From Haliotis cracherodii (lineage: Eukaryota), in the NCBI RefSeq assembly GCF_022045235.1, contig NW_027266270.1, forward strand, positions 29,636,001 through 29,700,000: 64,000 bases of DNA, given 5' to 3'. A program made the translations under genes and the position numbers. Position 1 is the stretch's first letter; the number at the start of each line of letters is the position of its first letter. Shown here one piece after another: positions 756 through 43,330 of the stretch. The notes under the pieces were generated by a model that made no database searches, was not told the DNA's origin, and was given only the letters and a program-made list of their open reading frames with translations.

Positions 756-3700
756 TACTTACTTACTTACTTACTTTGGAGATTTAACGTGCGCTTTCCG
801 ACTGATGCGTATTTCGCACACGGGCCCGGCCAGGCCATTTAATGTGTTTCCGAAAGGGGCGAGGGTGGTCTGTGCAACCCAAGAGGGGGCTTTAGGGGTT
901 GCTTATATAGAATTTGGGAATTTTGAGATTTGGAATAGATGCTGATGGGGTTGGGGAGGAGAACTAAGGGAGCTGGGTATGGTGGATGATTGTTTGTTTA
1001 TGTGATTTTGATTTGGTAGGTTATTATGGTTTTAGATGCGTTTTATTAGTTCCGTTTTTATTAAGAATACGCCTAAGGCCTTGAAGTTTTCTAGTTTATT
1101 TTGTGGGTTTAGTATTGCTTCTAGAGTGAGAGCCTTGTTTAGATTGAGGGTGGTTTGTAATGCGGTTCGATGTGTTAGGTAGTGTGTGCAGTGGATGAGT
1201 GCGTGTTCTGGGGTTTCTGGTTGTTTGCAGTGTGGGCAGTTACCTGTAGTGTGTTTTTTAAATTTTTTTAGGTGGTTATTTAGGTTGGTGTGTCCTGTTT
1301 GGAGTTTAGTGATTACTCTGTCGATTTTTTTTGATGGATGGAGAATTTTTGGTTTGGTTAGTGGTTTGCTGAGCACTCTTTTGATTTTGCTATTTGAGTT
1401 TAGATATAGGTTATGCCATTTTTTTGTGATTTTTTGTTTGTTTACACTTTTAATTTCTGTTTTTGAGATGGGTAAGTTTAAGCTTATTTCTGGGATTTTA
1501 AGGGATAGTTTAGCTGCTTTATCGGCGTTTTCATTACCGTATATTCCTACGTGGGCGGGTATCCACAAGAAGGTTATTTGTTTGCCTGCTTTTGTTAGGT
1601 CGTTGGAGCTTTTAAGTATTTGATTTATTAATTTAGGTCGGTTTTTGGTATTTTTGTTTTGGAGGGCTTGTAGTCCACTTAGGGAGTCAGTAAGTATTAG
1701 GATTTTTTGGTTGTTTTTGGATTCTTGATTGTGGAGGGCTGAGGCCATGCCCATTAGTTCGGCCGTGAATATTGATTGGTTATTTGGGAGTCGGAAGGAT
1801 TGTGTGGTTTTAGTTGGTTGTGTGGTATGGACTCCGAAACCCGTGTGTTTGGAGGTCGGATCTGAGGATCCGTCCGTGTAAATGTGACACCAATTTGGCC
1901 AATTTTTGTGTATGTATGCTAGTGTGGTAGTTTTAGCTATGTTTGGGTCGGTTTGTTTATTTATTTGGCTAGCTAGTGTTGTGTCTATTTTGGGTATTTT
2001 AAGTTTAGGGGTGAAGATATTTGATTGTTTGCAGTTTTGTTTAAGATTTTTAATTTGGTGTTCATTTAGGTAGTTTGTTATTCTTTGGGATATTGGGGTA
2101 AGTAAGGGGTGTTTACGAGCTAGAGCTTGGTTTTTAGGGCTGATGTTTTGGTTTATTAAGTTTTGGATGAGAGGGTTTGATTGGGACGCGGCCCAGAAAT
2201 TTAAGCTTAGCTGTTCCCTGCGTAGACTTAGTGGCATTTCTCCTGTTAAGGCCTGAAGTGAGGTGTAGGAGGTGCCATGTTGGGTGCGTGTAATGAGTTT
2301 GAGAGCCTGATATTGTATTGAGTCAAGTTTTTTGGATAGAGAGTTGTTTAGGGTGTTGTATATGGCGCAGCCGTAGTCTAGTTTTGATCTAATTAGGGAT
2401 ATGTAGAGAGAGAGGAGAGTATCTTTGGAGGCTCCCCAGTTAGAGCCAGTTAGGCATCTTAGGGTGTTTAGGTCTTTACTGCATTTAGTTGTTAGGTTTT
2501 GGATGTGAGCATCCCAGGTGAGATGTTCATCGAAAATAAGTCCTAAGAATTTGGTTTGTTTTTGAAATTTGATTGTTTGGTTGTTTAGCTGGAGGATTGG
2601 GGAGGCGGGTTTCATGTTTTTATGTTTGAATACTATTCCTGTTGTTTTTTCTGAGTTAAGGGAGAAGCCCCATTTGTCAGCCCATTGTTGTATTTTATTA
2701 AGAGATTTTTGGAGTAGATTTGTGGCCATTTTCATGCTTTTAGTGCGGATCCAGATGGCTCCATCATCCGCGAATTTTGATGTGTTTACTTTAGGGGATA
2801 GACCCTCGAATAGATCGTTTATCATTATATTGAAGAGGGTGGGGCTGAGGATACTGCCCTGTGGAGTGCCATTTTCTAGGGGACATTGGTCCGATAGAGT
2901 TTGGTCTATACACACGGTTATTTTACGATTGTTTAGGAAGTCCTGGATGTAGTTTATTATCTGACCTTTGAGTCCTATTTTTTTAAGTTTTTGTATTAGC
3001 CCATCGTGCCATACCATGTCGAAAGCTTTAGAGAAGTCTAAGAAGATGCCTGTGGTATATTGTTTATTTAGTTGTCCTGTCTTAATATCTTGTTCTAGTC
3101 GGGCGAGGTTATCTAGGGTTGAGCGGCCAGGAGTGAAACCGCTTTGATCTGGGTTTATGGTGTTATTTTGGGTTAAGTAATGTTGTAATCTATTTTTAAC
3201 CATTGATTCCATTACTTTACATAAGTTTGAAGTTAGGGATATTGGTCTATATGAGTTAGCTTGATTAGCTGGTTTATTAGGTTTAGGGATTGGTATGACT
3301 AGGGCCTGTTTCCAGGGTGTAGGAACCTGTCCGTTTAGGTAGATGAGATTGTATAGTTTGAGTAGTGCCTGGAGCAGTTTTAGGGGGAGTTTTTTAATTA
3401 TTTGGTAAGAGGTTAGGTCTAATCCTGGGGCTGTGCCCTTTTTCCTGTTTTGGATTACGTAGAGGAGCTCCTCCATTGTGTAGGGTTGATTTATTTCTAG
3501 ATTGTTATTGTTTGGTTCTTTTGTGGGTTTGTTTTCTGTTTTAAGTTTATCTTGGAATTTTTGGCTGAAGTTGCTGTTACTGCTAACGGCCGAAAAGTGG
3601 TTGGCGAGATTATTTGCTTTTTGGGCGGGGTTGGTTGAGTTGTTAATGTTAGGTTTTTTTTTATGTCGTTTTAAGCCTCTAATGGCGTGGATTTTGCGCC

Positions 3701-4703
3701 AGACCGTTCTGGCATCTGTACGGTTATTTATACCTTCGCAGAATTTTTTCCAGTCTCTACTTTTGGCTATTTGGACTAGTTTTTGAACCTGGTGGTTTAG
3801 TTCGTGGGCTATGTTTAAATATTTGTAGTCGCGTTTTGCTTTATTGAAGGCTGATTTACGTTTTCGTCTAGTCTGTTCTATTTCCTCATTCCACCATGGT
3901 ACCGTCGGTTTGCCTGTCTTAGATACTTTGAAGGGGATGGAGGTTTTGGCTGCGTTTATTATATAGTCTGTTAGGTTTTTACAATAGGTTTCTGGATCAT
4001 TATTTTCTATTTCGTTTAAGTTAGCTTCGTTGCAGATATCTTGGAATTGGTCCCAGTTAGCTTTGTTGTAATGGAATTTTGGTTCTTGGTTTTCTGTTTG
4101 GATTGGTACGTTTGTATTTCCTATGGTTATGTTTATGGGGAAGTGGTCGCTACCTAGCGGGACGTCGTGCACTTCCCATTGAGTGCTTTGGGCTAGATCT
4201 GCGGTGCATATGGTTAGGTCGATAGCCGACATTTTTTGGTTTATCTTATCGTACCTCGTGGGTTGGTTGCTATTAAGGAGTACTAGGTCGTTTGTTTCTA
4301 TCCATTCGGAGATTAATTTGCCATGAGTATCTATTTTATCATCTATGCTCCATGTAGGATGGTGAGCGTTAAAGTCTCCTAGGAATATAGTAGATTTATC
4401 GCTTATTTTGAGTAGTTTGTTTAGATCCTCAGGTTGGACTTTTTGTTCCGCCCAGTGGTAAATATTTATGATGTTTATGTTTCGGTTATTTAATGTGATT
4501 TTAATGCCGTTGGCTTCTAGGTTTGGCGTGTCTATTTTTATTTCTTCGTAATTTATATCTTCCCTGATAAATATGATTAGTCCTCCTGCGGCTCTTCTTG
4601 TTTTCGGTTTAGCTCTGTCAGTTCTAACTGAGTTGTAGTTAGGTAGTGTGAATTTCGATTTTTTTGAGAATTTGGTTTCCTGTATACAAGCAATGTGAGG
4701 GCC
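756..4703 (-). mobile_element. I-group non-LTR retrotransposon (subfamily A1), 5'-truncated, inserted at the copy-1 core promoter
   Basis: (TAAG)n 3' tail at ~756-775. TSD ATGTGCTCACT at 745-755 and 4704-4714. Near-identical to the element at 37141-42944. Confidence 0.95.
1032..4703 (-). CDS. LINE ORF2 (APE endonuclease, RT, RNase H, CCHC), open from the truncation point and lacking the first ~29 codons
   Basis: GDFNAH and SDHFPI (APE); YRPISL, QSGF, PQGSILSP, FADD (RT); YTDGS, TAEL, TDSLS, WIPAHVGIYGNENAD (RNase H); CPHCKQPETPEHALIHC. Confidence 0.93.
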   Translation of the reverse strand, partial: GPHIACIQETKFSKKSKFTLPNYNSVRTDRAKPKTRRAAGGLIIFIREDINYEEIKIDTPNLEANGIKITLNNRNINIINIYHWAEQKVQPEDLNKLLKISDKSTIFLGDFNAHHPTWSIDDKIDTHGKLISEWIETNDLVLLNSNQPTRYDKINQKMSAIDLTICTADLAQSTQWEVHDVPLGSDHFPINITIGNTNVPIQTENQEPKFHYNKANWDQFQDICNEANLNEIENNDPETYCKNLTDYIINAAKTSIPFKVSKTGKPTVPWWNEEIEQTRRKRKSAFNKAKRDYKYLNIAHELNHQVQKLVQIAKSRDWKKFCEGINNRTDARTVWRKIHAIRGLKRHKKKPNINNSTNPAQKANNLANHFSAVSSNSNFSQKFQDKLKTENKPTKEPNNNNLEINQPYTMEELLYVIQNRKKGTAPGLDLTSYQIIKKLPLKLLQALLKLYNLIYLNGQVPTPWKQALVIPIPKPNKPANQANSYRPISLTSNLCKVMESMVKNRLQHYLTQNNTINPDQSGFTPGRSTLDNLARLEQDIKTGQLNKQYTTGIFLDFSKAFDMVWHDGLIQKLKKIGLKGQIINYIQDFLNNRKITVCIDQTLSDQCPLENGTPQGSILSPTLFNIMINDLFEGLSPKVNTSKFADDGAIWIRTKSMKMATNLLQKSLNKIQQWADKWGFSLNSEKTTGIVFKHKNMKPASPILQLNNQTIKFQKQTKFLGLIFDEHLTWDAHIQNLTTKCSKDLNTLRCLTGSNWGASKDTLLSLYISLIRSKLDYGCAIYNTLNNSLSKKLDSIQYQALKLITRTQHGTSYTSLQALTGEMPLSLRREQLSLNFWAASQSNPLIQNLINQNISPKNQALARKHPLLTPISQRITNYLNEHQIKNLKQNCKQSNIFTPKLKIPKIDTTLASQINKQTDPNIAKTTTLAYIHKNWPNWCHIYTDGSSDPTSKHTGFGVHTTQPTKTTQSFRLPNNQSIFTAELMGMASALHNQESKNNQKILILTDSLSGLQALQNKNTKNRPKLINQILKSSNDLTKAGKQITFLWIPAHVGIYGNENADKAAKLSLKIPEISLNLPISKTEIKSVNKQKITKKWHNLYLNSNSKIKRVLSKPLTKPKILHPSKKIDRVITKLQTGHTNLNNHLKKFKKHTTGNCPHCKQPETPEHALIHCTHYLTHRTALQTTLNLNKALTLEAILNPQNKLENFKALGVFLIKTELIKRI

Positions 4704-4727
4704 ATGTGCTCACTACCATCCGTAGAG

Positions 4728-4980
4728 TTTTATACCCTACCCACCACTATGGGTTCATCGCCTTCGATCTATTGGCTGGAAGTACTCTTTGATCCCTGGC
4801 TTCTATTAGATAGTTATTTATTCTTTGATCTATGGTTTCACAAGCCCGTGTTTTTATAGCATTGTATAAACAGTGCCAACTGACTAATCTCCTCTACACC
4901 ATGAAGCCAATAAGCTGATTGGAATTAGGATTGGCCTCTAGATTGGTACTTGCTTTGATTACATTTAAGGATGATTGGGA
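4728..4980 (-). promoter_or_regulatory. Displaced promoter of homeobox copy 1 (TATA, CCAAT boxes, TCF-like sites)
   Basis: TATAAAA at 4734-4728; CCAAT boxes at 4771, 4907, 4918, 4930, 4942, 4974; CTTTGAT at 4787, 4823, 4953. Homologous to the upstream regions of the array copies. Confidence 0.65.
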
Positions 4981-13724: not shown

Positions 13725-14230
13725 AAGTGAGATGTGCTCACCTTCCAACTGTGGAGTTTTATGCTCTACTCACCTCTCTGGCGTCATCATCTTCAACCCC
13801 ATTGGCTGTAAGGACTCTTTGATCCATGGCTTCTTTTTGAACATTTAACTTTCTTTGATCTAGGGTTTCACTAACCAATTGCTTACTCTTTCTTTATAAC
13901 ACCAAGCCAATCAGCTAATTGGAATTAAGTTTGGCCTCTTGATTCGTCTTTGCCTTATCAACATTCAAGGATGACGAGATTATCGAGTTTTGATAGACGG
14001 TCCTTGAGTGTGTACATGACGGAAAGCGGTTGATGGGGGTTTCATTGGTTTCATTGATCTCTGGCTTCTTTAACGCTGTGTTCCCTTTATGTTTGATTGG
14101 CTCTGGTGTCTTTCGTGATACTGGTTAGTGTTTTGATAGCGTTAAACAAACATTTTCCTTTGGCGGGATTTCCTGATTGACGTATCTTTCTTTGATTTTC
14201 TCTGACACAAACCAATTAGTTTATTGGATT
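13725..14230 (-). promoter_or_regulatory. Predicted homeobox promoter (Inr-like TCACTT, CATAAAA box, CCAAT cluster, TCF-like sites), repeated in each unit
   Basis: CATAAAA at 13763-13757; CCAAT at 13801, 13875, 13907, 13918, ~14044, ~14096, ~14212, ~14223; CTTTGAT at 13817, 13853, 14190. Confidence 0.65.
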
Positions 14231-14411
14231 GATTGTTTCGACTACAAGTTGGGTTTTTCACATTAACGAATGATAATGATGTTTCGTACTACTATCTTAA
14301 GCAGCTGAACGCAACGTTAAATTACACCCAGACTACACTCTGCGGAGTTGTGGGTAGAATATTTGCATAGCAAGCATAGTACATTATAAACAATATTGTA
14401 GTCAATGCGTA

Positions 14412-15845
14412 GGGCCGCGTCCCAATCAAACCCTCTCATCCAAAACTTAATAAACCAAAATATCAGCCCCAAAAACCAAGCTCTAGCACGTAAACACCCC
14501 TTACTTACCCCAATATCCCAAAGAATAACAAACTACCTAAATGAACACCAAATTAAAAATCTTAAACAAAACTGCAAACAATCAAATATCTTCACCCCTA
14601 AACTTAAAATACCCAAAATAGACACAACACTAGCTAGCCAAATAAATAAACAAACCGACCCAAACATAGCTAAAACCACCACACTAGCATACATACACGA
14701 AAATTGGCCAAATTGGTGTCACATTTACACGGACGGATCTACAGATCCGACCTCCAAACACACAGGTTTCGGAGTCCATACCACACAACCAACTAAAACC
14801 ACACAATCCTTCCGACTCCCAAACAACCAATCAATATTCACGGCAGAACTAATGGGCATGGCCTCAGCCCTCCATAATCAAGAATAAAAAAAACACCAAA
14901 AAAATCTTAATACTTACCGACTCCCTAAGTGGACTGCAAGCTCTCCAAAATAAAAATACCAAAAACCGACCTAAATTAATAAATCAAATACTTAAAAGCT
15001 CCAACGACCTAACTAAGGCAGGCAAACAAATAACCTTCTTGTGGATACCCGCCCACGTAGGAATATACGGTAATGAAATCGCCGATAAAGCAGCTAAACT
15101 ATCCCTCAAAATCCCAGAAATAAGCTTAAACTTACCCATCTCAAAATCAGAAATTAAAAGTGTAAACAAGCAAAAAATCACCAAAAAATGGCATAACCTT
15201 TATCTAAACTCAAATAGCCAAATCAAAAAGTACTCAGCAAACCACTAACCAAACCAAAAATTCTCCATCCATCAAAAAAAATCGACAGAGTAATCACTAA
15301 ACTCCAAACAGGACACGCCAACCTAAATAACTATCTAAAAAAATTTAAAAACATACTACAGGTAACTGCCCACACTGCAAACAACTAGAAACCCAAGAAC
15401 ACGCACTCATCCACTGCACACACTACCTAACACATCGAACCGCATTACAAACCACCCTCAATCTAAACAAGGCTCTCACTCTAGAAGCAATACTAAACCC
15501 ACAAAATAAACTAGAAAACTTCAAGGCCTTAGGCGTATTCTTAATCAAAACGGAACTAATAAAACGCATCTAAAAACACTATTATCTACCAAATCAAAAT
15601 TACATAAACAAACAAACATCCACCATACCCAGCTCCCTTAGTTCTCCTCCCCAACCCCATCGGCATCTATTCCAAATCTCAAAATTCCAAAATTCTATAT
15701 AAGCAACCCCTAAAGCCCCCTCTTGGGTTGCACACACCACTTTCGCCCCTTTCGGAAACACATTAAATGGCCTGGGCGGGCCCGTGTGCGAAATACGCAT
15801 CTGTCGGAAAGCGCACGTTAAATCTCCAAAGTAAGTAAGTAAGTA
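14412..15845 (+). mobile_element. I-group LINE (subfamily A2), 5'-truncated (RNase H region to 3' end), defective
   Basis: TSD AGTCAATGCGTA at 14400-14411 and 15846-15857; (TAAG)n tail; premature stop and frameshifts. The empty site is visible in other units (e.g. ~20180). Confidence 0.95.
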
Positions 15846-18082
15846 AGTCAATGCGTAACGTTAGTAAACACAATTGTTGATCAATGTTATTCCCTATTTT
15901 GATTTATACCATATGTTCCCGTATATTGTTTTCACGTTAACAGTTGACTTGTTTGTTCGTGTGTTTGTGACAGTTGTCACCTGTGGGGCAGGATACGCTC
16001 ATCTTTTCGCCCAAACCTGGTGTCATCACTATTTGATACTGATGCATTAACGCATGCATTTGATATAGTCGGATTGGTGTAATGGACCTTTAGAAAAGAT
16101 TTCTTTGGATTAATATGAATTAATGTGCACATCCTTATATGTGATACTAGTGTTGAGGATGTGATGTTAACGTTGAATATTTGATATTAATGTTGAACGT
16201 ATCCTAGTTATGGTGAATGTATGTTTGGATGAGTATTACAGTTATATCGTGAGGTATACGACATGTCAGCTTGATGCATGTGAATTTGAAACATGTTTAA
16301 AGGTGTTTAAATTCTAAGCATGTTTGGATTAAGGGAATGTTGTGTTTAGGCTATGAAGCGATGGTTCATATCATGTGTTTAGAATCTAAACGAGTTTAGA
16401 CAGAACACACATATGTGCATACCGTTAAGGATCCAAACACGTTCCTAAACATGTTTTGTATGTGTTTACATTCTACACACATTTTTACAGTGTGGTTTAA
16501 GTGGTGAATTATATTAATTTGATAAGTATGCAATCTACCTGGCAGGATTAGTATTCGCTGTTTACTAACCTTCTGGCCGCTGTTACTAATTTAAGTTAGT
16601 CGAATCAACTAGACTTTTTTCTCAGTGTAGGGAATTAGTTAAACATAAGATAATAAGATAAACTGATTCCTTCCTGTTGAAAATGACTGACATACAAACG
16701 AATATGCGCATTTATTAGGCAGGATATGTTTGCGCTCACTTCTTCAAAACACGCTTTTGTAAAAGGGGAGTTGATAACTGATTTTAATGGATATTTTCAA
16801 TGATCCGCCAAAATCACGCATCAGACTCCATTGGGTGGAAAATGCAAAAGAGCAGTGACAAATGTGTAAATGGGTCACTGAAGAATCAGTGATAACGCCT
16901 GGTGTTCGCGAAAAAGCCATGTGAAGGAGCACATGCTTTTTGTGATAGTAATGTTAAATAAGTGATGTCAATTGTGAACGTTTCATAGTTGTGGGGATGT
17001 ATGTTTTAAGCAGTATTTCAATTGTATCGTTAGTTATAAGCCATGTCAGCTTGTTGTATGTGGACGACAAGTCCAAAGTGAAGCAGGCTTTAGATGTTTA
17101 CCGCCTCCGTAAAACCCTCGAGCTCGGACATGGCGTTGCTAAACTGTAACACATAATCAGGGCGAGTCTCGGATTCGAATCCATGTGATATTTATGCTGA
17201 ATGTGTGGTGCATAATGTTGAATGTGTTATAGTAAAGTAAACTGTACAAAATTCACGTTGCACGAGTCATAGTAGTGTAAAATTGCGATATTAATGTTGA
17301 TGTTATAGTTATGTCGGATGTGTTATAGTTATGTTGAGCTTTACTGCATATACGGTGATAATGTGTGATGCATAATGACATCCTACAACTGCCCAACTGT
17401 ATAATGCATACGTATCCTGGATAGACACCTTCCTTTTGATCTGCTTCTAGGAATGTGTACAATACAAGTGTTCCATGTTAGATTTCCGATCTCGCACCTT
17501 TGACATCGGTTGATATAGTCTCCATATAAACCAGTTTGTTTAAATATCGATATATGTATGTGTGTATTTGTGTGTGACTTGTGTATTAGCATCATATTAT
17601 TTGCAACAGCAGGTACAATTATTCCTAATTTATTATTTTATGTTCACTTTACTCTTATTGATTGTTAAATGTCCTTTGTAGGGACAGGTGTTCAAATAGG
17701 TTTAACCAGTTAACCAATCTCGTTCCTTTTTGGTAATAAATATTGTTTAAGTCATAGTCTCCATATTCAGTAATGACATATCTAAGGAACAATACAATTC
17801 TAAAACTGTGTATTAATGTGACATATTTTATTTGTCATCAAAACAATAATAACAACTTCAGCACTCACATCCACAAATATCACAGTTATAGCACAGAATA
17901 AAGATAATATAGCACTATGTTTCAGACATGGGGATTGATGTTATACAAGTGACGGTCCTCTTGAACATATATATTGCTCTTAAAGGTATTTCCAATAGCA
18001 CTACGAGGGTCTCAGACATTATCATACAGACTTCATATTTGATATCAGTTACTATCATTCAAGTGATATTATCGTCCATATT

Positions 18083-32263: not shown

Positions 32264-32344
32264 CTTGGATTTGAAGAACGGTTTGTTCAAGGTTCTGAGG
32301 TAGCTGTGTATCAACAGACTCAACAAGTGAGATGTGCTCACCTT

Positions 32345-33328
32345 ACTTACTTACTTACTTACTTACTTTGGAGATTTAACGTGTGCTTTCCGACAGGTGC
32401 GTATTTCGCACACGGGCCCGCCCAGGCCATTTAATGTGTTTCCGAAAGGGGCGAAAGTGGTGTGTGCAACCCAAGAGTGGGCTTTAGGGTTTGCTTATAT
32501 AGAATTTGGGAAGTTTTTGAGATTTGGAATAGATGCCGATGGAGTTGGGGAGGAGAACTAAGGGAGCTGGGTAGGGTAGATGTTTGTTTGTTTATGTGAT
32601 TTTGATTTGGTAGGTTATTGTGTTTTTAGATGCGTTTTCCGTTTTGATTAAGAATACGCCTAAGGCCTTGAAGTTTTCTAGTTTATTTTGTGGGTTTAGT
32701 ATTGCTTCTAGAGTGAGAGCCTTGTTTAGATTGAGGGTGGTTTGTAATGCGGTTCGATGTGTTAGGTAGTGTGTGCAGTGGATGAGTGCGTGTTCTTGGG
32801 TTTCTAGTTGTTTGCAGTGTGGGCAGTTACCTGTAGTGTGATTTTTTAAATTTTTTTAGGTGGTTATTTAGGTTGGTGTGTCCTGTTTGGAGTTTAGTGA
32901 TTACTCTGTCGATTTTTTTTGATTGATGTAGAATTTTTGGTTTGGTTAGTGGTTTGCTGAGCACTCTTTTGATTTGGCTATTTGAGTTTAGATATAGGCT
33001 ATGCCATTTTTGTGATTTTTTGCTTGTTTACACTTTTAATTTCTGATTTTGAGATGGGTAAGTTTAAGCTTATTTCTAGGATTTTGAGGGATAGTTTAGC
33101 TGCTTTATCGGCGTTTTCATTACCGTATATTCCTACGTGGGCGGGTATCCACAAGAAGGTTATTTGTTTGCCTGCCTTACACTAAATGGTCTGGCCAGGC
33201 CCGTGTGCGAAATTCGCTACAGTCGGAAAGCGCACGTTAAATCTTCTATATCAGTCAGTCAGTCAGGGTATCTTTGGAGGCTCCCCAGTTAGAGCCAATT
33301 AGGCATCTTAGGGTGTTTAGGTCTGTAC
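32345..33328 (-). mobile_element. I-group LINE (subfamily A2), 5'-truncated and internally deleted; first member of the stack
   Basis: (TAAG)n tail abuts TGCTCACCTT (32335-32344), which recurs at 33329-33338. About 825 bp are deleted internally and replaced by a foreign fragment. Confidence 0.9.
33180..33266 (+). mobile_element. 3' terminus of a third related LINE family or LINE-tailed SINE, with a (TCAG)4 tail
   Basis: AAATGGTCTGGCCAGGCCCGTGTGCG...CAGTCGGAAAGCGCACGTTAAATCT matches the A/B 3' motif but with distinct variants and a different tail; opposite orientation. Confidence 0.8.
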
Positions 33329-33338
33329 TGCTCACCTT

Positions 33339-36300
33339 ACTTACTTACTTATATTGGAGATTTAACGTGCGCTTTCCGACTGCAAGCGTATGTCGCACAC
33401 GGGCCCGGCCAGGCCATTTAATGTGTTTCCAAAAAGGGGAAAAGTGAGTTTGTGCAACCCAGGAGGGGGGCTTTAGGGGTTGCTTATATAGTAATTTTGA
33501 AATTTTGAGATTTGGAAAGAATGCCAAGAGTGGGTGGGGGACGAACTAAGGGAGCTGTGTGTGTTGGGTGGTTATTAAATAAGGTAGTTTTGGTTTTAAT
33601 ATTTTATTTGGTGTTTAAATGCGGCTAATTAGTCCCGTTTTTATTAGGTATATGCCTAAGGCTTTGAATTTTTCTAATTTATTTTGTGGATTTAGGATTG
33701 ATTCTAGTGTAAGTCCGGTTTTAAGATTTAGGGTGGTCTGTAGTGTTGTTCGGTGTGTTTGGTAGTGTGTGCAGTGAATGAGTACGTGTTCTGGTGTTTC
33801 TTGTTGTTTGCAATGTGGACAGTTTCCTGTTTTGTGTAGATTAGCTATTTAACGGTGATTATTTAGTTTGGTATGGTCTGTTTGTAGTTTGGTAATTATT
33901 TTGTCGATTTGTTTGGATGGGTGTAGTATTTTGGGTTTATTTAGGGTTTTTTTGAGTACTTTCCTGATTTGGCTATTTGAGTTTTGGTATATATTTTGCG
34001 ATTTTTTGTTGATTTTTTGTTTAGTGACACTTTTGATTTCTGATTTTGAGCTGGGTAAGTTTAAGCTTATTTCTGGGAGTTTAAGGGATAATTTTGCTGC
34101 TTTATCTGCCTTTTCATTGCCAAAGATTCCTACGTGGGCGGGGATCCAAATGAAATTTATTTGTTTACCTAACTTAGTTAAGTTGTTTGAGCTATTGAGT
34201 ATTTGATTTATTAGTTTGGGGCGGTTTTTAGTGTTTTTATTTTTGAGGGCTTGTAGTCCACTGAGGGAGTCGGTTAGGATGAGGATTTTTTGGTGTTTTT
34301 TAGATTGCTGATTGTGTAGTGCTGAGGCAATGCCCATTAGTTCGACCGTGAATATGGATTGGTTGTTTGGGAGTCGGTAAGATTGTGTGTCTTTGGTTGG
34401 TTGTGGGATGTGGACTCCGAAACCTGTGTGTTTTGAGATCGGATCTGAGGATCCGTCTGTGTATATGTGACACCAATTTGGCCAATTTTCATGTATGTAT
34501 GCTAGTGTGGTGGTTTTAGCGATGTTAGGATCGGTCTGTTTATTTAGTGTATCGGCTAGTGTTGTGTCTATTTTTGGTATTTTAAGTTTTGGAGTGAAGA
34601 TATTGGATGATTTATTGTTTTGTTTAAGATTATTTATTTTGTGTTCATTTAGGTAATTGGTTATTCTTTGGGAAATTGGAGTAAGTAGTGGATGTTTCCG
34701 GGCTAGGGCTTGGTTTCTAGGGCTAATATTTTTTTTTATTAAGTTTTGGATGAGAGGGTTTGATTGGGACGCGGCCCAGAAGTTTAGGGTAAGTTGTTCC
34801 CTACGTAGTTTAAGTGGCATTTCTACTGTTAAGGCCTGGAGTGAGGTGGAGGAGGTGCCATGTTGAGTTCGTGTGATTAGTTTGAGGGGCCTGATACTGG
34901 ATTGAGTCTAGTTTTTTAATGAGAGAGTTGTTTAAGGTGTCGTAAATGGCACTGCCATAGTCTAGTTTGGATCTAATTAGTGATATATAGAGTGAGAGGA
35001 GAGTGTTTTTAGAGGCCCCCCAGTTGGAGCCGGTAAGGCATCTTAACGTGTTTAGGTCTTTGCTGCATCTGGTTACAAGGTTTTTAATGTGAGCATCCCA
35101 GGTGAGATGTTCATCGAAGATTAATCCTAAGAATTTGGTTTGTTTTTGGAATTTGATTGGTTTGTTGTTTAGTCGGAGGTTTAGGGAGGCGGGTTGCTTA
35201 TTTTTGTGTTTAAATACTATTCCTGTGGTTTTTTCTGAGTTTAGGGAGAAGCCCCATTTGTCAGCCCATTTTTGTATTTTATTTAGAGATTTTTGTAGTA
35301 AGTTTTGGGCCATTTTAATGCTTTTAGTGCGGATCCAGAGGGCTCCATCATCCGCGAATTTTGATGTGTTTACTTTGGGGGATAGTCCCTCGAATAGATC
35401 GTTAATCATAATATTGAAGAGTGTTGGGCTTAGGATACTGCCCTGGGGAGTGCCATTTTCTAGGGGACATTGGTCCGATAGCGTTTGGTCTATGCCCACG
35501 GTGATTTTGTGGTTTGTTAGGAAACTTTGGATGTAGTTAATTATTTGACCTTTAAGACATATTTTTGAAGTTTTTGTATTAGCCCGTTATGCCAAACCAT
35601 GTCGAATGCTTTGGAGAAGCCTAGAAAGATAACTGTAGTATATTGTTTGTTAAGTTGGCCTGTTTTAATGTCCTGCTCTAGTCGGGCGAGGTTATCTAAG
35701 GTTGAGCGTCCAGGAGTGAAACCGCTTTGGTCTGGATTTATTATGTTGTTTTGTTCTAAGTAGTGTTGTAACCTGTTTTTTGCCATTGATTCCATTACTT
35801 TGCATAAGTTAGAAGTTAGGGAGATTGGTCTGTATGAATTAGCCTGGTCAGCTGGTCTATTGGGTTTGGGGATTGGTATGACCAGGGCTTGTTTCCAAGG
35901 TGATGGGACCTGTCCGTTTAGATATATGAGGTTATAGAGTTTCAGAAGAGTTTGGAGTAGTTTGGGTGGTAATTGTTTAATTATCTGGTATGAAGTAAGC
36001 CTGGGGCTGTGCCCTTTTTCCTATTTTGTAGGACGTGGAGTAGTTCTTCCATTGTGAAATGGAGATTAATTTCTAGGTTATTATCTTTTGGCTCTTTGGT
36101 AAATTTGGTTTCTGATTTTAGTTGTTCCTGGAATTTTTGATTGAAGTTGCTATTCCTACTGACGGCCGAGAAGTGATTTGCTAGGTTATTAGCTTTTTCA
36201 GTGGGGTTTGTTGAATTGTTTATGTTGGGAGTTTTTTTTATGACGTTTAATGCCCCTATTGGCGTGGATTTTGCGCCAAACTGTTCTGGCGTCTGTATGA

Positions 36301-37128
36301 TGGTTAATTTCTTCGCAAAAAATTTTCCAGTCTCTTGTTTTAGCTGTTTTAACTAAGCTTTGTACTTTGTGATTTAGTTCACGTGCTATCTTTGGGTGTT
36401 TGAAGTCACGTTTGGCTTTATTGAATGCGGATTTGCTTTAACGCCTAGTTTGTTCTATCTCCCCGTTCCACCAAGGAACCGAGGGTTTGCCTATGCTGGT
36501 TATTTTGAAAGGAATGGAGTTTTTAGCTGCGTTTATCATGCAGTCAGTGGGGTTTTTGCAGTAGATTTCGGGGTCGTTACTTTCTAGGTCAGCTAGGTTA
36601 GCCTGGTTGCAAATTTCCTGAAATTTGTCCCAGTCGGCTTTGTTGAAGTGGAATTTAGGTTCCTGGTTTGGGGCTGGTGTTGGGATGTTTACGTCTCCTG
36701 TAGTTATATTTATGGGGAAGTGGTCACTACCTAGTGGTACCCCGTGTACTTCCCATTGAATACTTTGGGCTAAATCTGGGGTGCATATGGTTAAGTCGAT
36801 AGCCGACATTTTGTGGTGTATTTTGTCGTATCTAGTAGGTTGGTTGTTATTTATTAGTATTAGGTCATTTTGTTCTATGCATTCTGAGATGAGTTTTCCG
36901 TGTTTATCTATTTTATCTTCTATACCCCAGGTAGGGTGGTGGGCATTAAAGTCTCCTAGGAAGATTGTAGATTTATTGCCTATTTGGTGGAGGGTGTTTA
37001 AATCCTCAGGTTTGACCTGTTTTTCTACCCAGTGGTATATATTTATGATATTAATTTTTTGGTTGCTATTTGTTATTTGGATACTGTTTGCTTCTAGGTT
37101 TGGTGTGTTTATTTTTAGTTCTTTGTTC
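33339..37128 (-). mobile_element. I-group LINE subfamily B (clearly diverged from A), 5'-truncated in the APE domain, multiply frameshifted; second member of the stack
   Basis: ORF2 fragments at 36438-37130, 35541-35795, 34810-35499 and 33849-34820 carry the same APE/RT/RNase H motifs. (AAGT)n tail. Flanked by ACTGCTCACCTT at 33327-33338 and 37129-37140. Confidence 0.93.
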
Positions 37129-37411
37129 ACTGCTCACCTTACTTACTTACTTACTTTGGAGATTTAACGTGCGCTTTCCGACTGATGAGTATTTCGCACA
37201 CGGGCCCGGCCAGGCCATTTAATGTGTTTCCGAAAGGGGCGAGGGTGGTCTGTGCAACCCAAGAGGGGGCTTTAGGGGTTGCTTATATAGAATTTTGGAA
37301 TTTTGAGATTTGGAATAGATGCCGATGGGGTTGGGGAGGAGAACTAAGGGAGCTGGGTATGGTGGATGATTGTTTGTTTATGTGATTTTGATTTGGTAGG
37401 TTATTATGGTT

Positions 37412-40400
37412 TTAGATGCGTTTTATTAGTTCCGTTTTGATTAAGAATACGCCTAAGGCCTTGAAGTTTTCTAGTTTATTTTGTGGGTTTAGTATTGCTT
37501 CTAGAGTGAGAGCCTTGTTTAGATTGAGGGTGGTTTGTAATGCGGTTCGATGTGTTAGGTAGTGTGTGCAGTGGATGAGTGCGTGTTCTGGTGTTTCTGG
37601 TTGTTTGCAGTGTGGGCAGTTACCTGTAGTGTGTTTTTTAAAAAAATTTAGGTGGTTATTTAGGTTGGTGTGTCCTGTTTGGAGTTTAGTGATTACTCTG
37701 TCGATTTTTTTTGATGGATGTAGAATTTTTGGTTTGGTTAGTGGTTTGCTGAGCACTCTTTTGATTTGGCTATTTGAGTTTAGATATAGGCTATGCCATT
37801 TTTGTGATTTTTTGTTTGTTTACACTTTTAATTTCTGATTTTGAGATGGGTAAGTTTAAGCTTATTTCTGGGATTTTGAGGGATAGTTTAGCTGCTTTAT
37901 CGGCGTTTTCATTACCGTATATTCCTACGTGGGCGGGTATCCACAAGAAGGTTATTTGTTTGCCTGCCTTAGTTAGGTCGTTGGAGCTTTTAAGTATTTG
38001 ATTTATTAATTTAGGTCGGTTTTTGGTATTTTTGTTTTGGAGGGCTTGCAGTCTACTTAGGGAGTCAGTAAGTATTAAGATTTTTTTGTGGTTTTTGGAT
38101 TCTTGATTGTGGAGGGCTGAGGCCATGCCCATTAGTTCTGCCGTGAATATTGATTGGTTATTTGGGAGTCGGAAGGATTGTGTGGTTTTAGTTGGTTGTG
38201 TGGTATGGACTCCGAAACCTGTGTGTTTGGAGGTCGGATCTGAGGATCCGTCCGTGTAAATGTGACACCAATTTGGCCAATTTTTGTGTATGTATGCTAG
38301 TGTGGTAGTTTTAGCTATGTTTGGGTCGGTTTGTTTATTTATTTGGCTAGCTAGTGTTGTGTCTATTTTGGGTATTTTAAGTTTAGGGGTGAAGATATTT
38401 GATTGTTTGCAGTTTTGTTTAAGATTTTTAATTTGGTGTTCATTTAGGTAGTTTGTTATTCTTTGGGATATTGGGGTAAGTAAGGGGTGTTTACGAGCTA
38501 GAGCTTGGTTTTTGGGGCTGATGTTTTGGTTTATTAAGTTTTGGATGAGAGGGTTTGATTGGGACGCGGCCCAGAAATTTAAGCTTAGCTGTTCCCTGCG
38601 TAGACTTAGTGGCATTTCTCCTGTTAGGGCCTGAAGTGAGGTGTAGGAGGTGCCATGTTGGGTGCGTGTAATGAGTTTGAGAGCCTGATATTGTATTGAG
38701 TCACGTTTTTTAGATAGAGAGTTGTTTAGGGTGTTGTATATGGCGCAGCCGTAGTCTAGTTTTGATCTAATTAGTGATATGTAGAGAGAGAGGAGAGTAT
38801 CTTTGGAGGCTCCCCAGTTAGAGCCAGGTAGGCATCTTAGGGTGTTTAGGTCTTTACTGCATTTAGTTGTTAGGTTTTGGATGTGAGCATCCCAGGTGAG
38901 ATGTTCATCGAAAATAAGTCCTAAGAATTTGGTTTGTTTTTGAAATTTGATTGTTTGATTGTTTAGCTGGAGGATTGGGGAGGCGGGTTTCATGTTTTTA
39001 TGTTTGAATACTATTCCTGTTTTTTTTTTCTGAGTTAAGGGAGAAGCCCCATTTGTCAGCCCATTGTTGTATTTTATTAGAGATTTTTGGAGTAGATTTT
39101 TGGCCATTTTCATGCTTTTAGTGCGGATCCAGATGGCTCCATCATCCGCGTATTTTGATGTGTTTACTTTAGGGGATAGACCCTCGAATAGATCGTTTAT
39201 CATTATATTGAAGAGGGTGGGGCTGAGGATACTGCCCTGGGGAGTGCCATTTTCTAGGGGACATTGGTCCGATAGAGTTTGGTCTATACCCACGGTTATT
39301 TTACGATTGTTTAGGAAGTCCTGGATGTAGTTTATTATCTGACCTTTGAGTCCTATTTTTTTAAGTTTTTGTATTAGCCCATCGTGCCATACCATGTCAT
39401 AAGCTTCAGAGAAGTCTAAGAAGATGCCAGTGGTATATTGTTTATTTAGTTGTCCTGTCTTAATATCTTGTTCTAGTCGGGCGAGGTTATCTAGGGTTGA
39501 GCGGCCAGGAGTGAAACCGCTTTGATCTGGGTTTATGATGTTATTTTGGATTAAGTAATGTTGTAATCTATTTTTAGCCATTGATTCTATTACTTTACAT
39601 AAGTTTGAAGTTAGGGATATTGGTCTATATGAGTTAGCTTGATTAGCTGGTTTATTAGGTTTAGGGATTGGTATGACTAGGGCCTGTTTCCAGGGAGTAG
39701 GAACCTGTCCGTTTAGGTAGATGAGATTGTATAGTTTGAGTAGTGCCTGGAGTAGTTTTAGGGGGAGTTTTTTAATTATTTGGTAAGAGGTTAGGTCTAA
39801 TCCTGGGGCTGTGCCCTTTTTCCTGTTTTGGATTACGTAGAGGAGCTCCTCCATTGTATAGGGTTGATTTATTTCTAGATTGTTAATGTTTGGTTCTTTT
39901 GTGGGTTTGTTTTCTGTTTTAAGTTTATCTTGGAATTTTTGGCTGAAGTTGCTGTTACTGCTAACGGCCGAAAAGTGGTTGGCGAGATTATTTGCTTTTT
40001 GGGCGGGGTTGGTTGAGTTGTTAATGTTAGGGTTTTTTTATGTCGTTTTAAGCCTCTAATGGCGTGGATTTTGCGCCAGACCGTTCTGGCATCTGTACGG
40101 TTATTTATACCTTCGCAGAATTTTTTCCAGTCTCTACTTTTGGCTATTTGGACTAGTTTTTGAACCTGGTGGTTTAGTTCGTGGGCTATATTTAAATATT
40201 TGTAGTCGCGTTTTGCTTTATTGAAGGCTGATTTACGTTTTCGTCTAGTCTGTTCTATTTCCTCATTCCACCATGGTACCGTCGGTTTGCCTGTCTTAGA
40301 TGTTTTGAAAGGGATGGAGGTTTTGGCTGCGTTTATTATATAGTCTGTTAGGTTTTTACAATAGGTTTCTGGATCATTATTTTCTATTTCGTTTAAGTTA

Positions 40401-41167
40401 GCTGCGTTGCAGATATCTTGGAATTGGTCCCAGTTAGCTTTATTGTAATGGAATTTTGGTTCTTGGTTTTCTGTTTGGATTGGTACGTTTGTATTTCCTA
40501 TGGCTATGTTTATGGGGAAGTGGTCACTACCTAGCGGGACGTCGTGCACTTCCCATTGAGTGCTTTGGGCTAGATCTGCGGTGCATATGGTTAGGTCGAT
40601 AGCTGACATTTTTTGGTTTATCTTATCGTACCTCGTGGGTTGGTTGCTATTAAGGAGTACTAGGTCGTTTGTTTCTATCCATTCGGAGATTAATTTGCCA
40701 TGATTATCTATTTTATCATCTATGCTCCATGTAGGATGTTGAGCGTTAAAGTCTCCTAGGAATATAGTAGATTTATCGCTTATTTTGAGTAGATTGTTTA
40801 GATCCTCAGGTTGGACTTTTTGTTCCGCCCAGTGGTAAATATTTATGATGTTTATGTTTCGGTTATTTAATGTGATTTTAATGCCGTTGGCTTCTAGGTT
40901 TGGCGTGTCTATTTTTATTTCTTCGTAATTTATATCTTCCCTGATAAATATGATTAGTCCTCCTGCAGCTCTTCTTGTTTTCGGTTTAGCTCTGTCAGTT
41001 CTAACTGAGTTGTAGTTAAGTAGTGTGAATTTCGATTTTTTTGAGAATTTGGTTTCCTGTAAACAAGCTATGTGAGGGCCTTTATTTAGTTTAAATTTAG
41101 TTTTTAGTTCATGGCCGTGGGAGGTGAGTCCGTTGGCGTTCCACTGAAAAATATTTAGTCCTTCCAT
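37412..41167 (-). CDS. LINE ORF2 (APE-RT-RNase H-CCHC) with several homopolymer frameshifts
   Basis: Begins MEGLNIFQWNANGL...ACLQET (APE N-terminus); ORF pieces at 39875-41167, 37791-39854 and 37412-37756. Breaks fall in A/T runs and may be real or sequencing errors. Confidence 0.88.
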
Positions 41168-41210
41168 TATTGGTTTCGGGTGATTGGTGATTTAGTTTTT
41201 AGTTTTTATT

Positions 41211-42853
41211 TTATTCGGTGAGTTCTTTTAGATGGAGGTTAAAGAGGAAGAAGGGAAGATCGGTTAATTTTAGATTGAAAGCTACTTTGTGGAAGGATTC
41301 CATACTAGCTTTTGGTGAGTTTTGACTATGCATGTATGCTAGGAGTAAGGTGAGGTTATTTAGGTTTGGGCTGTTGGCTGGTTGGGAAGTTTGGTTTGTT
41401 TTAGTTGGAGTAGTGTCTATTGTTTCCTCAGTAGTGGAGAAATCTTCGTCATTGGTTGGATTAGGTTTAGCTGGTTGAGTTTCCATGGGGGAGGCATGTG
41501 ATGTGGAGGGTTGTGAAGGTGTTGGCGGGATGGGTGTAGCTGATGTTTTCTTAGTGTTTGTGTTTTGTTGTTGTGCTTGCTTGTGGGAGAGTGTTGTTGC
41601 CATATGGGCTGTAGGGTGCTTGGATGAGGGTCGTGTTGTGGTGGTCATTTTGAGGTTTGTTTTGCATGCGGGGGTTGATGTTTTGGCTATGTGAGATGTG
41701 GGAGGGTTTGTGGTTGGTTGAGTGGCTGCTTGTGTGTGTGAGGTGGGTGCGGTTTCTCGGTAGGGGTCCCAGACAGAGCTGTCGGTTATGGGTGTGGTGT
41801 TTGTTTGTGGGATGGTGTTTGGGTGTGGTGTAGGGAGGAGTGGTTTAGATGCAGGTGTAGCAAATTTTCGTGTTTGGATTTTAGCCGTTTCTATGTTTAT
41901 GTGTTTGTTGACCTGCTGGGAAAGTGTGTGTCTGTGTGGGCATTGGTTTGAAAGTGAGGTGTGTTGGGTGGATTTGCAGTGGATGCACCAGGGTGTGCAT
42001 GTGCCTGGGCAGTCTGTTTGTGCGCATTTTTTATACATTTAGTTTTAGGGTATGTGCATTGGGAAGCATTGTGGTTGTATTTGAGGCACTTTGAACATTG
42101 CTTAACCTGCTTTATATAGGGTTTGACTTCTAAGTTGGTGTGGGCTCCGAAGGATATGTGTTTGGGGGCTTCAGGGAATTTAGCGGGTTTTTTAAAGTTG
42201 ATTATGACAATGGAGGTTGGGACCGTTTTTCCGTTTCTAGTTGAGGTTATTCTGCGCGTGCTGGTGATTAGGGGTTGAGGGTTTTGGTCTTGGTTTATGT
42301 TAGCTTCTAGAGAGTATAATTGTAAGTCCTCAGTTGTTTCCCTTGGGTTAACCCTAATTACGCCTCGTGTATATTGTTGCCAATTAGGTGTTTGTTTGAT
42401 TACCGTGACGTGGAATATTTGAGTTATTTTATTTGCTGCGTTGTAAGATTCTCGGTTAGGAAAGATTATCTGGTATCCTTTGTTGGCTTTTTTAATATTG
42501 TTGTAATTTATTTTTTGTCTTTTGAACCAAAGTCCTATTTTATCTGCCGAAAGGTCTAGTGAGAGAGTGGTGCCTGAGCCTGCTGAGAAGAAGTAGAGGG
42601 CGAAGGTGGTGAGGAAGGCGGCCGGGGAGGGTGTTGGCGATGGAGGTGGAGTGGATGTGTCGAGTTTGCGTTTTTTGGTGTTTTGTGGTGGCGAGTTAGC
42701 TGGTTTGGTTGGGGTGGTGTATGTCGTGTTTTCGCCATACTCGGTCGGGACGATGTTTTCGAGTGACCTCCCAGAAGTGTTGTGCGCTTCCGCAGGCGTG
42801 GGTGAGTAAGGAGCTGGAATGTCTGCGAGTGTGGCGTTGCGGGTGTCAGTCAT
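41211..42853 (-). CDS. LINE ORF1 gag-like protein with zinc knuckles (one frameshift in an A-run near 42030)
   Basis: CSKCLKYNHNASQC (CX2CX4HX4C) followed by further Cys/His clusters (CIHCKSTQHTSLSNQC); Thr/Pro-rich tail. Confidence 0.85.
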
Positions 42854-42944
42854 ATTGTTTGGGTGTTGTGTTGGAGAGCGTGTGTTGTGGTAAGTGGTGG
42901 TGGAGTGTTTTGGGGAGGTGAGTTGGTTTGTTGTTTTTACTTGG

Positions 42945-43330
42945 ACTGCTCACCTTCCATTTGTGGAGTTTTATGCTCTACTAACTTCTTTCGCTTCATC
43001 ACCTTAAACCTCATTGGCTGTAAGGACTCTTTGATCCATGGCTTCTATTTGAACATTTAACTTTCTTTGATCTAGGGTTTCACTAACCAATTAACTACTT
43101 TTTCTTAACAACATCAATCCAATCAGCTGATTGGAATTTCAGCGATCTCTGGCTTCTTTAACACTGCGCTCCCTTTATGTTTGATTGGCTCTGGTTTCTT
43201 TCATGTCTCGTGTCATTGGTTAGTGTTTTGACAGCGTTAAACAAACAGTATCCATTGGCGGGATATTCCTGATTAGCTTATCTTTCTTTGATTTTCTCTT
43301 TTACAAACCAATCAGTTTATTGGATTGTTT
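42945..43330 (-). promoter_or_regulatory. Original promoter of homeobox copy 6, now directly upstream of the full-length LINE
   Basis: Homologous to 13741-14230. CATAAAA at 42975-42969, CCAAT at 43013, CTTTGAT at 43029, 43065 and 43286. Confidence 0.75.

What the first reader, a model, noticed from the sequence alone, without database searches (positions are those of the whole stretch)
32335..42956. Head-to-tail stack of three LINEs whose TSDs record the insertion order, always at the promoter-proximal site
On the sense (minus) strand the order is promoter-AAGGTGAGCAGT-[full-length A1]-AAGGTGAGCAGT-[B]-AAGGTGAGCA-GT[A2]-AAGGTGAGCA-CAT-gene. The native target continues ...GAGCA-CAT. The extra GT matches the RT-region sequence at the truncated 5' end of A2 (GCAGTA.., joined by GCA microhomology). 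That GT was then copied into the 12-bp TSDs of B and of full-length A1. The order is therefore A2, then B, then A1. Each new element chose the target copy next to the TATA box and ignored the regenerated downstream copies. Decay agrees: A2 is the most damaged, B is heavily frameshifted and A1 is nearly intact. This implies upstream promoter sequence or bound factors are needed for targeting, and that each newcomer displaces the previous one from the promoter.
Basis: partly seen in the sequence, partly recalled or inferred. Interest (0 to 1): 0.88.

Follow-up and report, generated by a model that had tools for sequence, protein, structure and literature searches.

The report
LINE stack at a TATA-box start site
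Three broken copies of a jumping gene (a LINE) landed one after another at the same spot, just after the TATA box of a homeobox gene. This LINE family tends to insert about 20-30 bases downstream of TATA boxes, which I found described for no LINE.

Summary
The stack is real. Three sense-oriented LINE copies (A1, B, A2) on the minus strand are separated by copies of the 10-bp target AAGGTGAGCA. Four neighbouring units of a TALE-homeobox tandem array carry that target empty.

- A1 is not full length. It lacks the first 778 bp.
- B is a separate young subfamily, not a decayed copy.
- B's junction has two extra filler bases (GA).
- A2 is composite.

The GT after the target belongs to A2's own sequence. 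It is foreign to B and A1, so both copied it as part of a 12-bp duplication. Private divergence ranks A2 (~2.7%) > B (~2%) > A1 (~0.9%). The order A2, then B, then A1, each at the promoter-proximal copy, is well supported but not proven.

The family is dispersed, with thousands of copies and no fixed target. Its sites do carry a forward-oriented TATA-like motif 19-24 bp upstream of the first nick. That is about 26-32 bp upstream of the element's 5' end. Evidence:
- 37 sites in two independent sets, p about 1e-6 to 1e-8.
- Genome-wide, 32 of 101 full-length 5' ends have it, against 5 of 101 in a shifted control window.

This explains why the copy next to the TATA box is reused. The scan reported the same TATA-homing earlier on other DNA of this genome (s1-820424).

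The reads test for intermediate alleles was uninformative.

The parts
42968..42975 (-). TATA-like box (CATAAAAC) of the first array unit. It lies 19 nt upstream of the first base of the target duplication.
   Evidence: The promoter is 85-90% identical to the promoters of the empty units.
42945..42956 (-). Promoter-proximal target copy S1, AAGGTGAGCA plus the inherited GT
37141..42944 (-). A1: family-A LINE copy of 5,804 bp. It lacks the first 778 bp of the full-length element. It has ORF1 with a CCHC knuckle, APE, RT and RNase H, with frame breaks, and a (GTAA)n tail.
37129..37140 (-). Target copy S2, AAGGTGAGCAGT (12-bp duplication made by A1)
37127..37128 (-). Two filler bases (GA) at the 5' junction of B. 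They are native neither to B nor to the target.
33339..37126 (-). B: 5'-truncated copy of a sister subfamily, 82% identical to A1. Its 3' end holds TATAAG before the (GTAA)n tail.
33329..33338 (-). Target copy S3, AAGGTGAGCA. The next two bases (GT) are A2's own sequence.
32345..33328 (-). A2: oldest member. It is truncated in the RT region at a GCA microhomology and has an internal deletion. An 89-bp stretch at 33179-33267 holds an antisense 3'-end fragment of a (TCAG)n-tailed family.
32335..32344 (-). Target copy S4, AAGGTGAGCA, followed by the native CAT and the 5' UTR and first exon of the TALE homeobox gene
756..4703 (-). C0: independent family-A insertion at the homologous site of a diverged paralog. 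The duplication is AGTGAGCACAT (745-755 and 4704-4714) and the TATAAAAC box is at 4727-4734.
14412..15847 (+). INV: older family-A fragment inside the array, in the opposite orientation. It has a 12-bp duplication, a TATAAAC 15 nt upstream of it, and empty-site controls in the sister units.
13735..13744 (-). Native empty target (also at 19513-19522, 23847-23856 and 28162-28171) in the other array units

Best explanation
Three separate target-primed reverse-transcription events put 5'-truncated copies of two sister LINE subfamilies into one nick site. The LINEs have APE, RT and RNase H domains and a (GTAA)n tail. The site lies at the predicted transcription start of the first unit of a TALE-homeobox tandem array.

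These LINEs are not sequence-specific. They do prefer to nick the bottom strand about 19-24 bp downstream of a forward TATA-like motif. The top strand is nicked about 10 bp further on, so the element's 5' end lands about 26-32 bp after the TATA.

Sequence of events:
1. A2 came first. It joined at a GCA microhomology, so its own GT now follows the upstream target copy.
2. B came next at the same TATA-measured position. Its top-strand nick fell 12 nt into the site, so the duplication copied that GT.
3. A1 did the same.

Each event needs the gene's TATA box at the right distance. Only the promoter-proximal target copy qualifies, so older copies are pushed downstream.

Shown: the junction anatomy, the foreignness of GT to B and A1, the divergence ranking, and the TATA association.
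Inferred: the order of B against A1. Whether the TATA sequence or a TATA-bound factor is recognised is left open.
For: Junctions:
- Junction sequences and coordinates.
- Empty sites in four sister units.
- GT is native to A2 only.

Dating:
- A2's nearest relative among 2,600 candidates is about 3.4% away.
- B differs by about 2.1-2.4% from all of its 39 best relatives.
- In the same 1.86 kb, A1 has 0.87% private substitutions and A2 has 2.7%.

The family is dispersed with diverse flanks.

TATA association:
- TATAA starts at -24..-18 from the nick in 8 of 14 sites, against 1.9% expected.
- Position-weight-matrix (PWM) score test for a TATA box: p=3.9e-6 (15 sites) and p=3.6e-8 (22 independent 5' junctions). 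Shifted control windows gave nothing.
- Forward orientation scores above reverse, p=0.002 and p=0.014.
- Genome-wide, 32 of 101 full-length 5' ends have TATAW at gap 20-32, against 5 of 101 at gap 50-62.

Independent hits that fit the rule:
- Same site in a paralog, duplication ending 31 nt after TATAAAAC.
- INV in this window.
- A second stack elsewhere (L074), whose later duplication copies the earlier junction's letters ACTC and which sits 20 nt after TATAAAAA.
Against: - The site sets are small (37 sites) and the windows were chosen after looking at the first set.
- Strict TATAA is found at only 12 of 101 full-length ends, so a large share of insertions lack a clear motif. Two of the 15 nick-aligned sites score well below background.
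- B's private divergence is estimated indirectly from bit scores.
- A2's divergence could partly reflect an older source lineage rather than time in place.
- B's tail holds TATAAG 18 nt before the next target copy, so an insertion of A2 behind B is geometrically possible.
- No read-level confirmation of the assembly and no intermediate alleles.
Confidence: 0.75

Rival explanations
1. A different insertion order. Either B came first and A2 then entered the target copy behind B, guided by the TATAAG in B's own 3' end. Or B entered the middle copy after A1 was already in place.
For: B's 3' end reads TATAAG 18 nt before the next target copy. Elsewhere, elements do stack behind tails that carry a TATA-like motif (L064, L025, and three loci). 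The TSD letters alone fit B entering the middle copy.
Against: - B-first needs B's filler (GTGA) to begin by chance with the same GT as A2's native 5' end, about 1 in 16.
- A2 is the most diverged and carries a nested insertion.
- B is about twice as diverged as A1.
- The middle copy sits behind an A-type tail that has no TATA-like motif.
Confidence: 0.13
2. The hotspot comes from the endonuclease liking the local sequence around AAGGTGAGCA, with the upstream flank needed only as part of the nick site. The TATA box is incidental.
For: Two paralogs with similar sequence were hit at the same base. Short microhomology exists between the (GTAA)n tail and AAG/AGT at the nick.
Against: Sequences at and after the nick are diverse in about 30 other copies. 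The shared feature is the oriented TATA-like motif about 20 bp away, which also appears in unrelated sites.
Confidence: 0.06
3. The stack is not three insertions. It is instead an assembly artefact, or a product of unequal crossing-over or duplication within the tandem array.
For: The region is a tandem array and the elements are high-copy repeats. One true tandem duplicate of a LINE fragment plus its duplication exists elsewhere (L067). No spanning read was obtained.
Against: The three members differ in subfamily, truncation point and junction letters. No gene sequence lies between them. The other units are empty. The junctions have a coherent TSD structure.
Confidence: 0.04

Closest known systems
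Dictyostelium TRE5-A, an APE-type LINE that integrates about 50 bp upstream of tRNA genes
   Same: It is a non-LTR element with position-specific, orientation-specific integration measured from a promoter complex rather than from a fixed target sequence. Its ORF1 protein binds TFIIIB subunits, including TBP (PMC5911963).
   Different: TRE5-A targets Pol III genes and needs TFIIIC/TFIIIB. Here the landmark is a Pol II-type TATA motif, the distance is about 20 bp to the nick, and the element lies in sense orientation downstream of the motif. No protein contact has been tested.
Yeast Ty3, an LTR element that integrates at Pol III start sites through TBP and Brf1
   Same: Integration falls at the transcription start, positioned by a TBP-containing factor (PMC5911963).
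   Different: Ty3 uses an integrase rather than target-primed reverse transcription, and it uses Pol III promoters.
Site-specific LINEs (R1/R2 in 28S rDNA, Tx1, NeSL and SLACS in spliced-leader genes)
   Same: Repeated insertion at one base position, and occasional head-to-tail copies (from my own knowledge).
   Different: Those families sit almost only in one target sequence. This family is dispersed over thousands of different flanks.
Drosophila telomeric HeT-A 'promoting in tandem'
   Same: Head-to-tail LINE arrays in which sequence at the 3' end of one member serves the next member downstream (from my own knowledge). Here B-type and (TCAG)n-type 3' ends hold a TATA-like motif, and new copies are found about 30 bp behind them.
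   Different: HeT-A adds to chromosome ends without target duplications. Here every member is flanked by a duplication and the sites are internal.
I/Nimb-like RNase H-bearing APE LINEs
   Same: The domain order is APE, RT, RNase H. ORF1 has a CCHC knuckle. Copies show 5' truncation and variable TSDs.
   Different: The clade was not placed by phylogeny here. The (GTAA)n tail and the TATA-linked targeting are not features I know from that group.

Membership tests
APE-type LINE of the RNase H-bearing (I/Nimb-like) group | Apurinic-type endonuclease domain N-terminal to the RT | tested here: met
   Exo_endo_phos_2, E=3e-19, in 39875-41167
APE-type LINE of the RNase H-bearing (I/Nimb-like) group | Reverse transcriptase followed by an RNase H domain | tested here: met
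   RVT_1, E=7e-48, and RNase_H, E=3e-18, in one 1066-aa ORF
APE-type LINE of the RNase H-bearing (I/Nimb-like) group | ORF1 with CCHC zinc knuckles | tested here: inconclusive
   There is one clear CX2CX4HX4C motif. Further Cys/His motifs follow after a frame break. No Pfam hit.
APE-type LINE of the RNase H-bearing (I/Nimb-like) group | RT phylogeny places it inside the clade | not tested
Sequence-specific (single-target) LINE | Nearly all copies lie in one target sequence | tested here: not met
   The tail-plus-target junction is found only at this locus. There are 1,579-3,656 candidate copies with diverse flanks.
Promoter-factor-guided, position-specific retrotransposon (TRE5-A / Ty3 type) | Insertion at a fixed distance and orientation from a promoter element | tested here: met
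   A forward TATA-like motif lies 19-24 bp before the nick and 26-32 bp before the 5' end. Controls were null.
Promoter-factor-guided, position-specific retrotransposon (TRE5-A / Ty3 type) | Physical contact between an element protein and the transcription factor, and dependence on factor occupancy | not testable with these tools
   No binding or occupancy data. Direct reading of the DNA motif is equally possible.
Telomere-type head-to-tail LINE array (HeT-A/TART) | End addition without target-site duplications | tested here: not met
   Each member is flanked by the duplicated target.

The most novel reading that the evidence does not exclude
The LINE reads TATA boxes that are occupied by the transcription machinery. 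It nicks the template strand where promoter DNA opens, about 20 bp after the TATA, and so places its own first base at the host-specified start site. Every new copy, even a truncated one, would then borrow a ready-made core promoter. Tails that carry a TATA-like motif would seed self-extending head-to-tail arrays. Early-embryo or germline promoters, such as this TALE array, would be hit repeatedly because they are active when the element moves.
Probability: 0.3. Interest if true: 0.9.

Novelty: new variant of a known kind. Interest (0 to 1): 0.74.

Why it matters
LINEs are usually seen in two ways. Either they are near-random inserters with a short nick-site preference, or they are strict specialists for one multicopy target. 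A dispersed LINE that measures its insertion point from Pol II TATA boxes would be a third mode.

It would also offer a simple answer to the old question of how 5'-truncation-prone LINEs secure a promoter.

The stack is a natural experiment on that rule. The same 10-bp target is present four times, and by the inferred order both later insertions used the copy that keeps the TATA box at the right distance.

It also shows how such elements can repeatedly disrupt or rewire the start sites of developmental genes.

Tried and rejected
- Reads test. I laid one raw-read run and three contig runs on 37045-43044 to look for a promoter-to-B joint (an allele without A1) and for junction support. Thousands of family copies swamped the output. 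No informative joint or spanning piece was listed, so this says nothing either way.
- More genome copies. I used bit scores instead and did not try another route.
- Rfam on the first 779 bp of a full-length copy gave no family, including self-cleaving ribozymes.
- Pfam on ORF1 gave nothing usable.
- Simple nick-site consensus. I looked for one in 14 sites with both junctions and found none.
- Strict site specificity is rejected.
- Tandem duplication as the origin of this stack is rejected, because the members differ. It does explain L067.
- Three literature searches found no LINE described as targeting Pol II TATA boxes. The library is incomplete, so this is absence of evidence only.
Divergence was counted against majority columns without printing any sequence.

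Full report
**What is there**

The window holds a minus-strand tandem array of a TALE-class homeobox gene. The large exon matches Homeobox_KN and the period is about 4.3 kb. Four units carry an empty site that reads TATA-like box, 11 nt, AAGGTGAGCA, CAT, then the 5' UTR.

In the first unit of the array, the promoter and the gene are separated by 10.6 kb of three sense-oriented LINE copies. Each copy ends in a (GTAA)n tail followed by AAGGTGAGCA. The coordinates were checked base by base and are listed under parts. The promoter above the stack is 85-90% identical to the promoters of the empty units. The large exon below the stack is still open. The junction 'tail plus target' occurs three times in the 1.18-Gb genome, all in this stack.

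**What the elements are**

The copies encode an apurinic-type endonuclease, a reverse transcriptase and an RNase H. ORF1 carries a CCHC knuckle.

- **A1.** A1 is not full length. About 28 other copies continue upstream of its first base. Full-length copies begin 778 bp further 5' with CAGTTGCAG, so the full element is about 6.6 kb.
- **B.** B is only 82% identical to A1 but 98% identical to many other copies. It therefore belongs to a separate young subfamily.
- **A2.** A2 is composite. It has 61 bp from the RT region, an 89-bp stretch (33179-33267) holding an antisense 3'-end fragment of a third family with a (TCAG)n tail, and the last 830 bp.
- **Coding state.** None of the three is coding-competent. 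Measured against the longest ORF2 in the window, A1 and B each show two frame breaks, and A2 shows more.

**The GT argument**

At the position where A2 starts, A1 reads GCA followed by GTA. So A2 joined the target at a GCA microhomology, and the GT after the target is A2's own sequence.

Other family-A copies read CA, not GT, before A1's first base. Other B copies read GCT before B's first native base. In the stack, that base is preceded by GT plus two filler bases, GA.

GT is therefore foreign to both B and A1. The simplest account is that each made a 12-bp duplication of a site that already carried A2's GT. I ran it, and they do not.

**Dating**

- A2's best match among 2,600 candidates is about 3.4% away.
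- In the last 1.86 kb, counted against the majority of 14 family copies, substitutions private to each copy are A1 0.87%, C0 0.38%, A2 2.7% and INV 2.9%.
- B differs by about 2.1-2.4% from every one of its 39 best relatives over the homologous 1.86 kb. Those relatives score almost alike, so most of that difference is B's own.

The ranking A2 > B > A1 agrees with the junction logic. The letters alone cannot order B against A1, because B could have entered the middle copy. That step rests on the dating and on the rule described below.

**Why this site**

The family is dispersed, with 1,579 to 3,656 candidate copies. The sequences at and after the nick are diverse. Strict site specificity is therefore ruled out.

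Even so, this window holds an independent insertion (C0) at the homologous base of a diverged paralog. A stack elsewhere (L074) repeats the logic. There, the later, upstream element's duplication includes four junction letters left by the earlier one.

I aligned the sites where both junctions are known at the first nick, 14 at first and 15 once INV was added. A forward TATA-like motif appears 19-24 bp upstream.

- TATAA starts at -24..-18 in 8 of 14 sites, against 1.9% expected.
- A TATA-box position-weight-matrix (PWM) score test gives p=3.9e-6 (15 sites). For 22 independent 5' junctions of long copies, with the window moved by the TSD length, it gives p=3.6e-8. Shifted control windows are null.
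- The motif is orientation-biased.
- Genome-wide, 101 exact full-length 5' ends exist. Of these, 32 have TATAW 25-37 nt upstream, against 5 at 55-67 nt. Four of those five also carry a TATAW at the proper distance, and the fifth (L014) has CATAAAAG there.
- The older inverted copy in this window (INV) also sits 15 nt after TATAAAC.

In the focal site, the box CATAAAAC starts 19 nt before the duplication. The duplications end 29 nt after it for A2 and 31 nt for B and A1. In the paralog the duplication also ends 31 nt after its box, TATAAAAC.

**What this explains**

- The copy next to the gene's TATA box keeps the landmark at the right distance, so it is the copy that is reused.
- The top-strand nick, about 31 nt from the box, reaches two bases into the previous element. 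This is how GT was copied.
- The element's 5' end falls where a TATA box would place a transcription start. Whether transcription really starts there is inference, because no start-site data were available.
- B-type and (TCAG)n-type 3' ends themselves hold a TATA-like motif. New copies are found about 30 bp behind them (L064, L025, and three loci). The rule therefore follows the motif and not the gene.
- Re-hits are more common than uniform use of all TATAA motifs would predict. This hints at further determinants such as motif strength or occupancy. That point is argument, not measurement.

**Limits**

- The site sets are small.
- A large share of insertions lack a clear motif.
- B's age is indirect.
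- No read-level confirmation or intermediate allele was obtained.
- I could not fetch more genome sequence.

**Earlier scan notes and literature**

After my own tests, I found that an earlier follow-up in this scan reports the same TATA-homing, about 31 bases downstream, on another piece of this genome (s1-820424). The two results agree, but they are not independent of the genome. Another note calls the genome black abalone. I did not check that.

I found no paper describing a LINE that targets Pol II TATA boxes. The nearest known systems are TRE5-A and Ty3 at Pol III genes (PMC5911963).

Noticed in passing
window 14385-15857 (+): An older family-A fragment (INV) lies in the opposite orientation inside the array. 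It has a 12-bp duplication, a TATAAAC 15 nt upstream, and exact empty-site controls in the sister units (for example at 20180-20191).
   Followed up: yes
L074 (G000:C3:18891440-18894802), about 1000-1960: A second stack. A family-A copy sits upstream of a 63-bp fragment of a (TCAG)n-tailed family. The later duplication includes four junction letters of the earlier insertion, and TATAAAAA lies 20 nt before the nick.
   Followed up: yes
L067 (G000:C13:825265-828627): Two copies of the same 381-bp 3' fragment, truncated at the same base, lie in tandem with the same duplication between them. This looks like a tandem duplicate rather than two insertions.
   Followed up: partly
G000:C38:1221484-1252395: Full-length 5' ends and B-type bodies recur with a 6,495-bp period (five copies). 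This is a head-to-tail array of whole elements.
   Followed up: no
G000:C13:9168314, C23:49086164, C23:50110123; L025: Full-length or near-full-length elements sit about 10-16 nt behind the (TCAG)n tail of a sister family. That family's 3' end itself contains TATAT, so these are stacks formed behind a tail that carries its own TATA-like motif.
   Followed up: partly
G000:C3:9017341, C4:4570668, C12:16734861, C34:55196418; L080: Different copies of one other repeat family were each hit at nearly the same place, about 27 nt after a TATATA. A second repeat family shows the same (C13:18318095, C23:75644669, C78:8024172, L019).
   Followed up: partly
G000:C2:59195404-59196962: Three copies of the element's 5' region lie at a 557-bp period, possibly a tandemly repeated 5' module.
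   Followed up: no
L064 (G000:C23:32787348-32790711), 500-1920: A B-type 3' end is followed by a family-A copy. The two copies of the 13-bp duplication differ at 3 positions, which is odd for a young insertion. The upstream copy's letters match the flank of another locus (L061).
   Followed up: partly
window 37045-43044, runs X1, X5, X7: Family A is abundant in runs carrying three different organism labels, so the family is shared by related species or labels.
   Followed up: no
L014:722-1500: The first 779 bp of the full-length element match no Rfam family. Another note of the scan proposes a ribozyme at the 5' end of a LINE in this genome, but it may concern a different family.
   Followed up: partly
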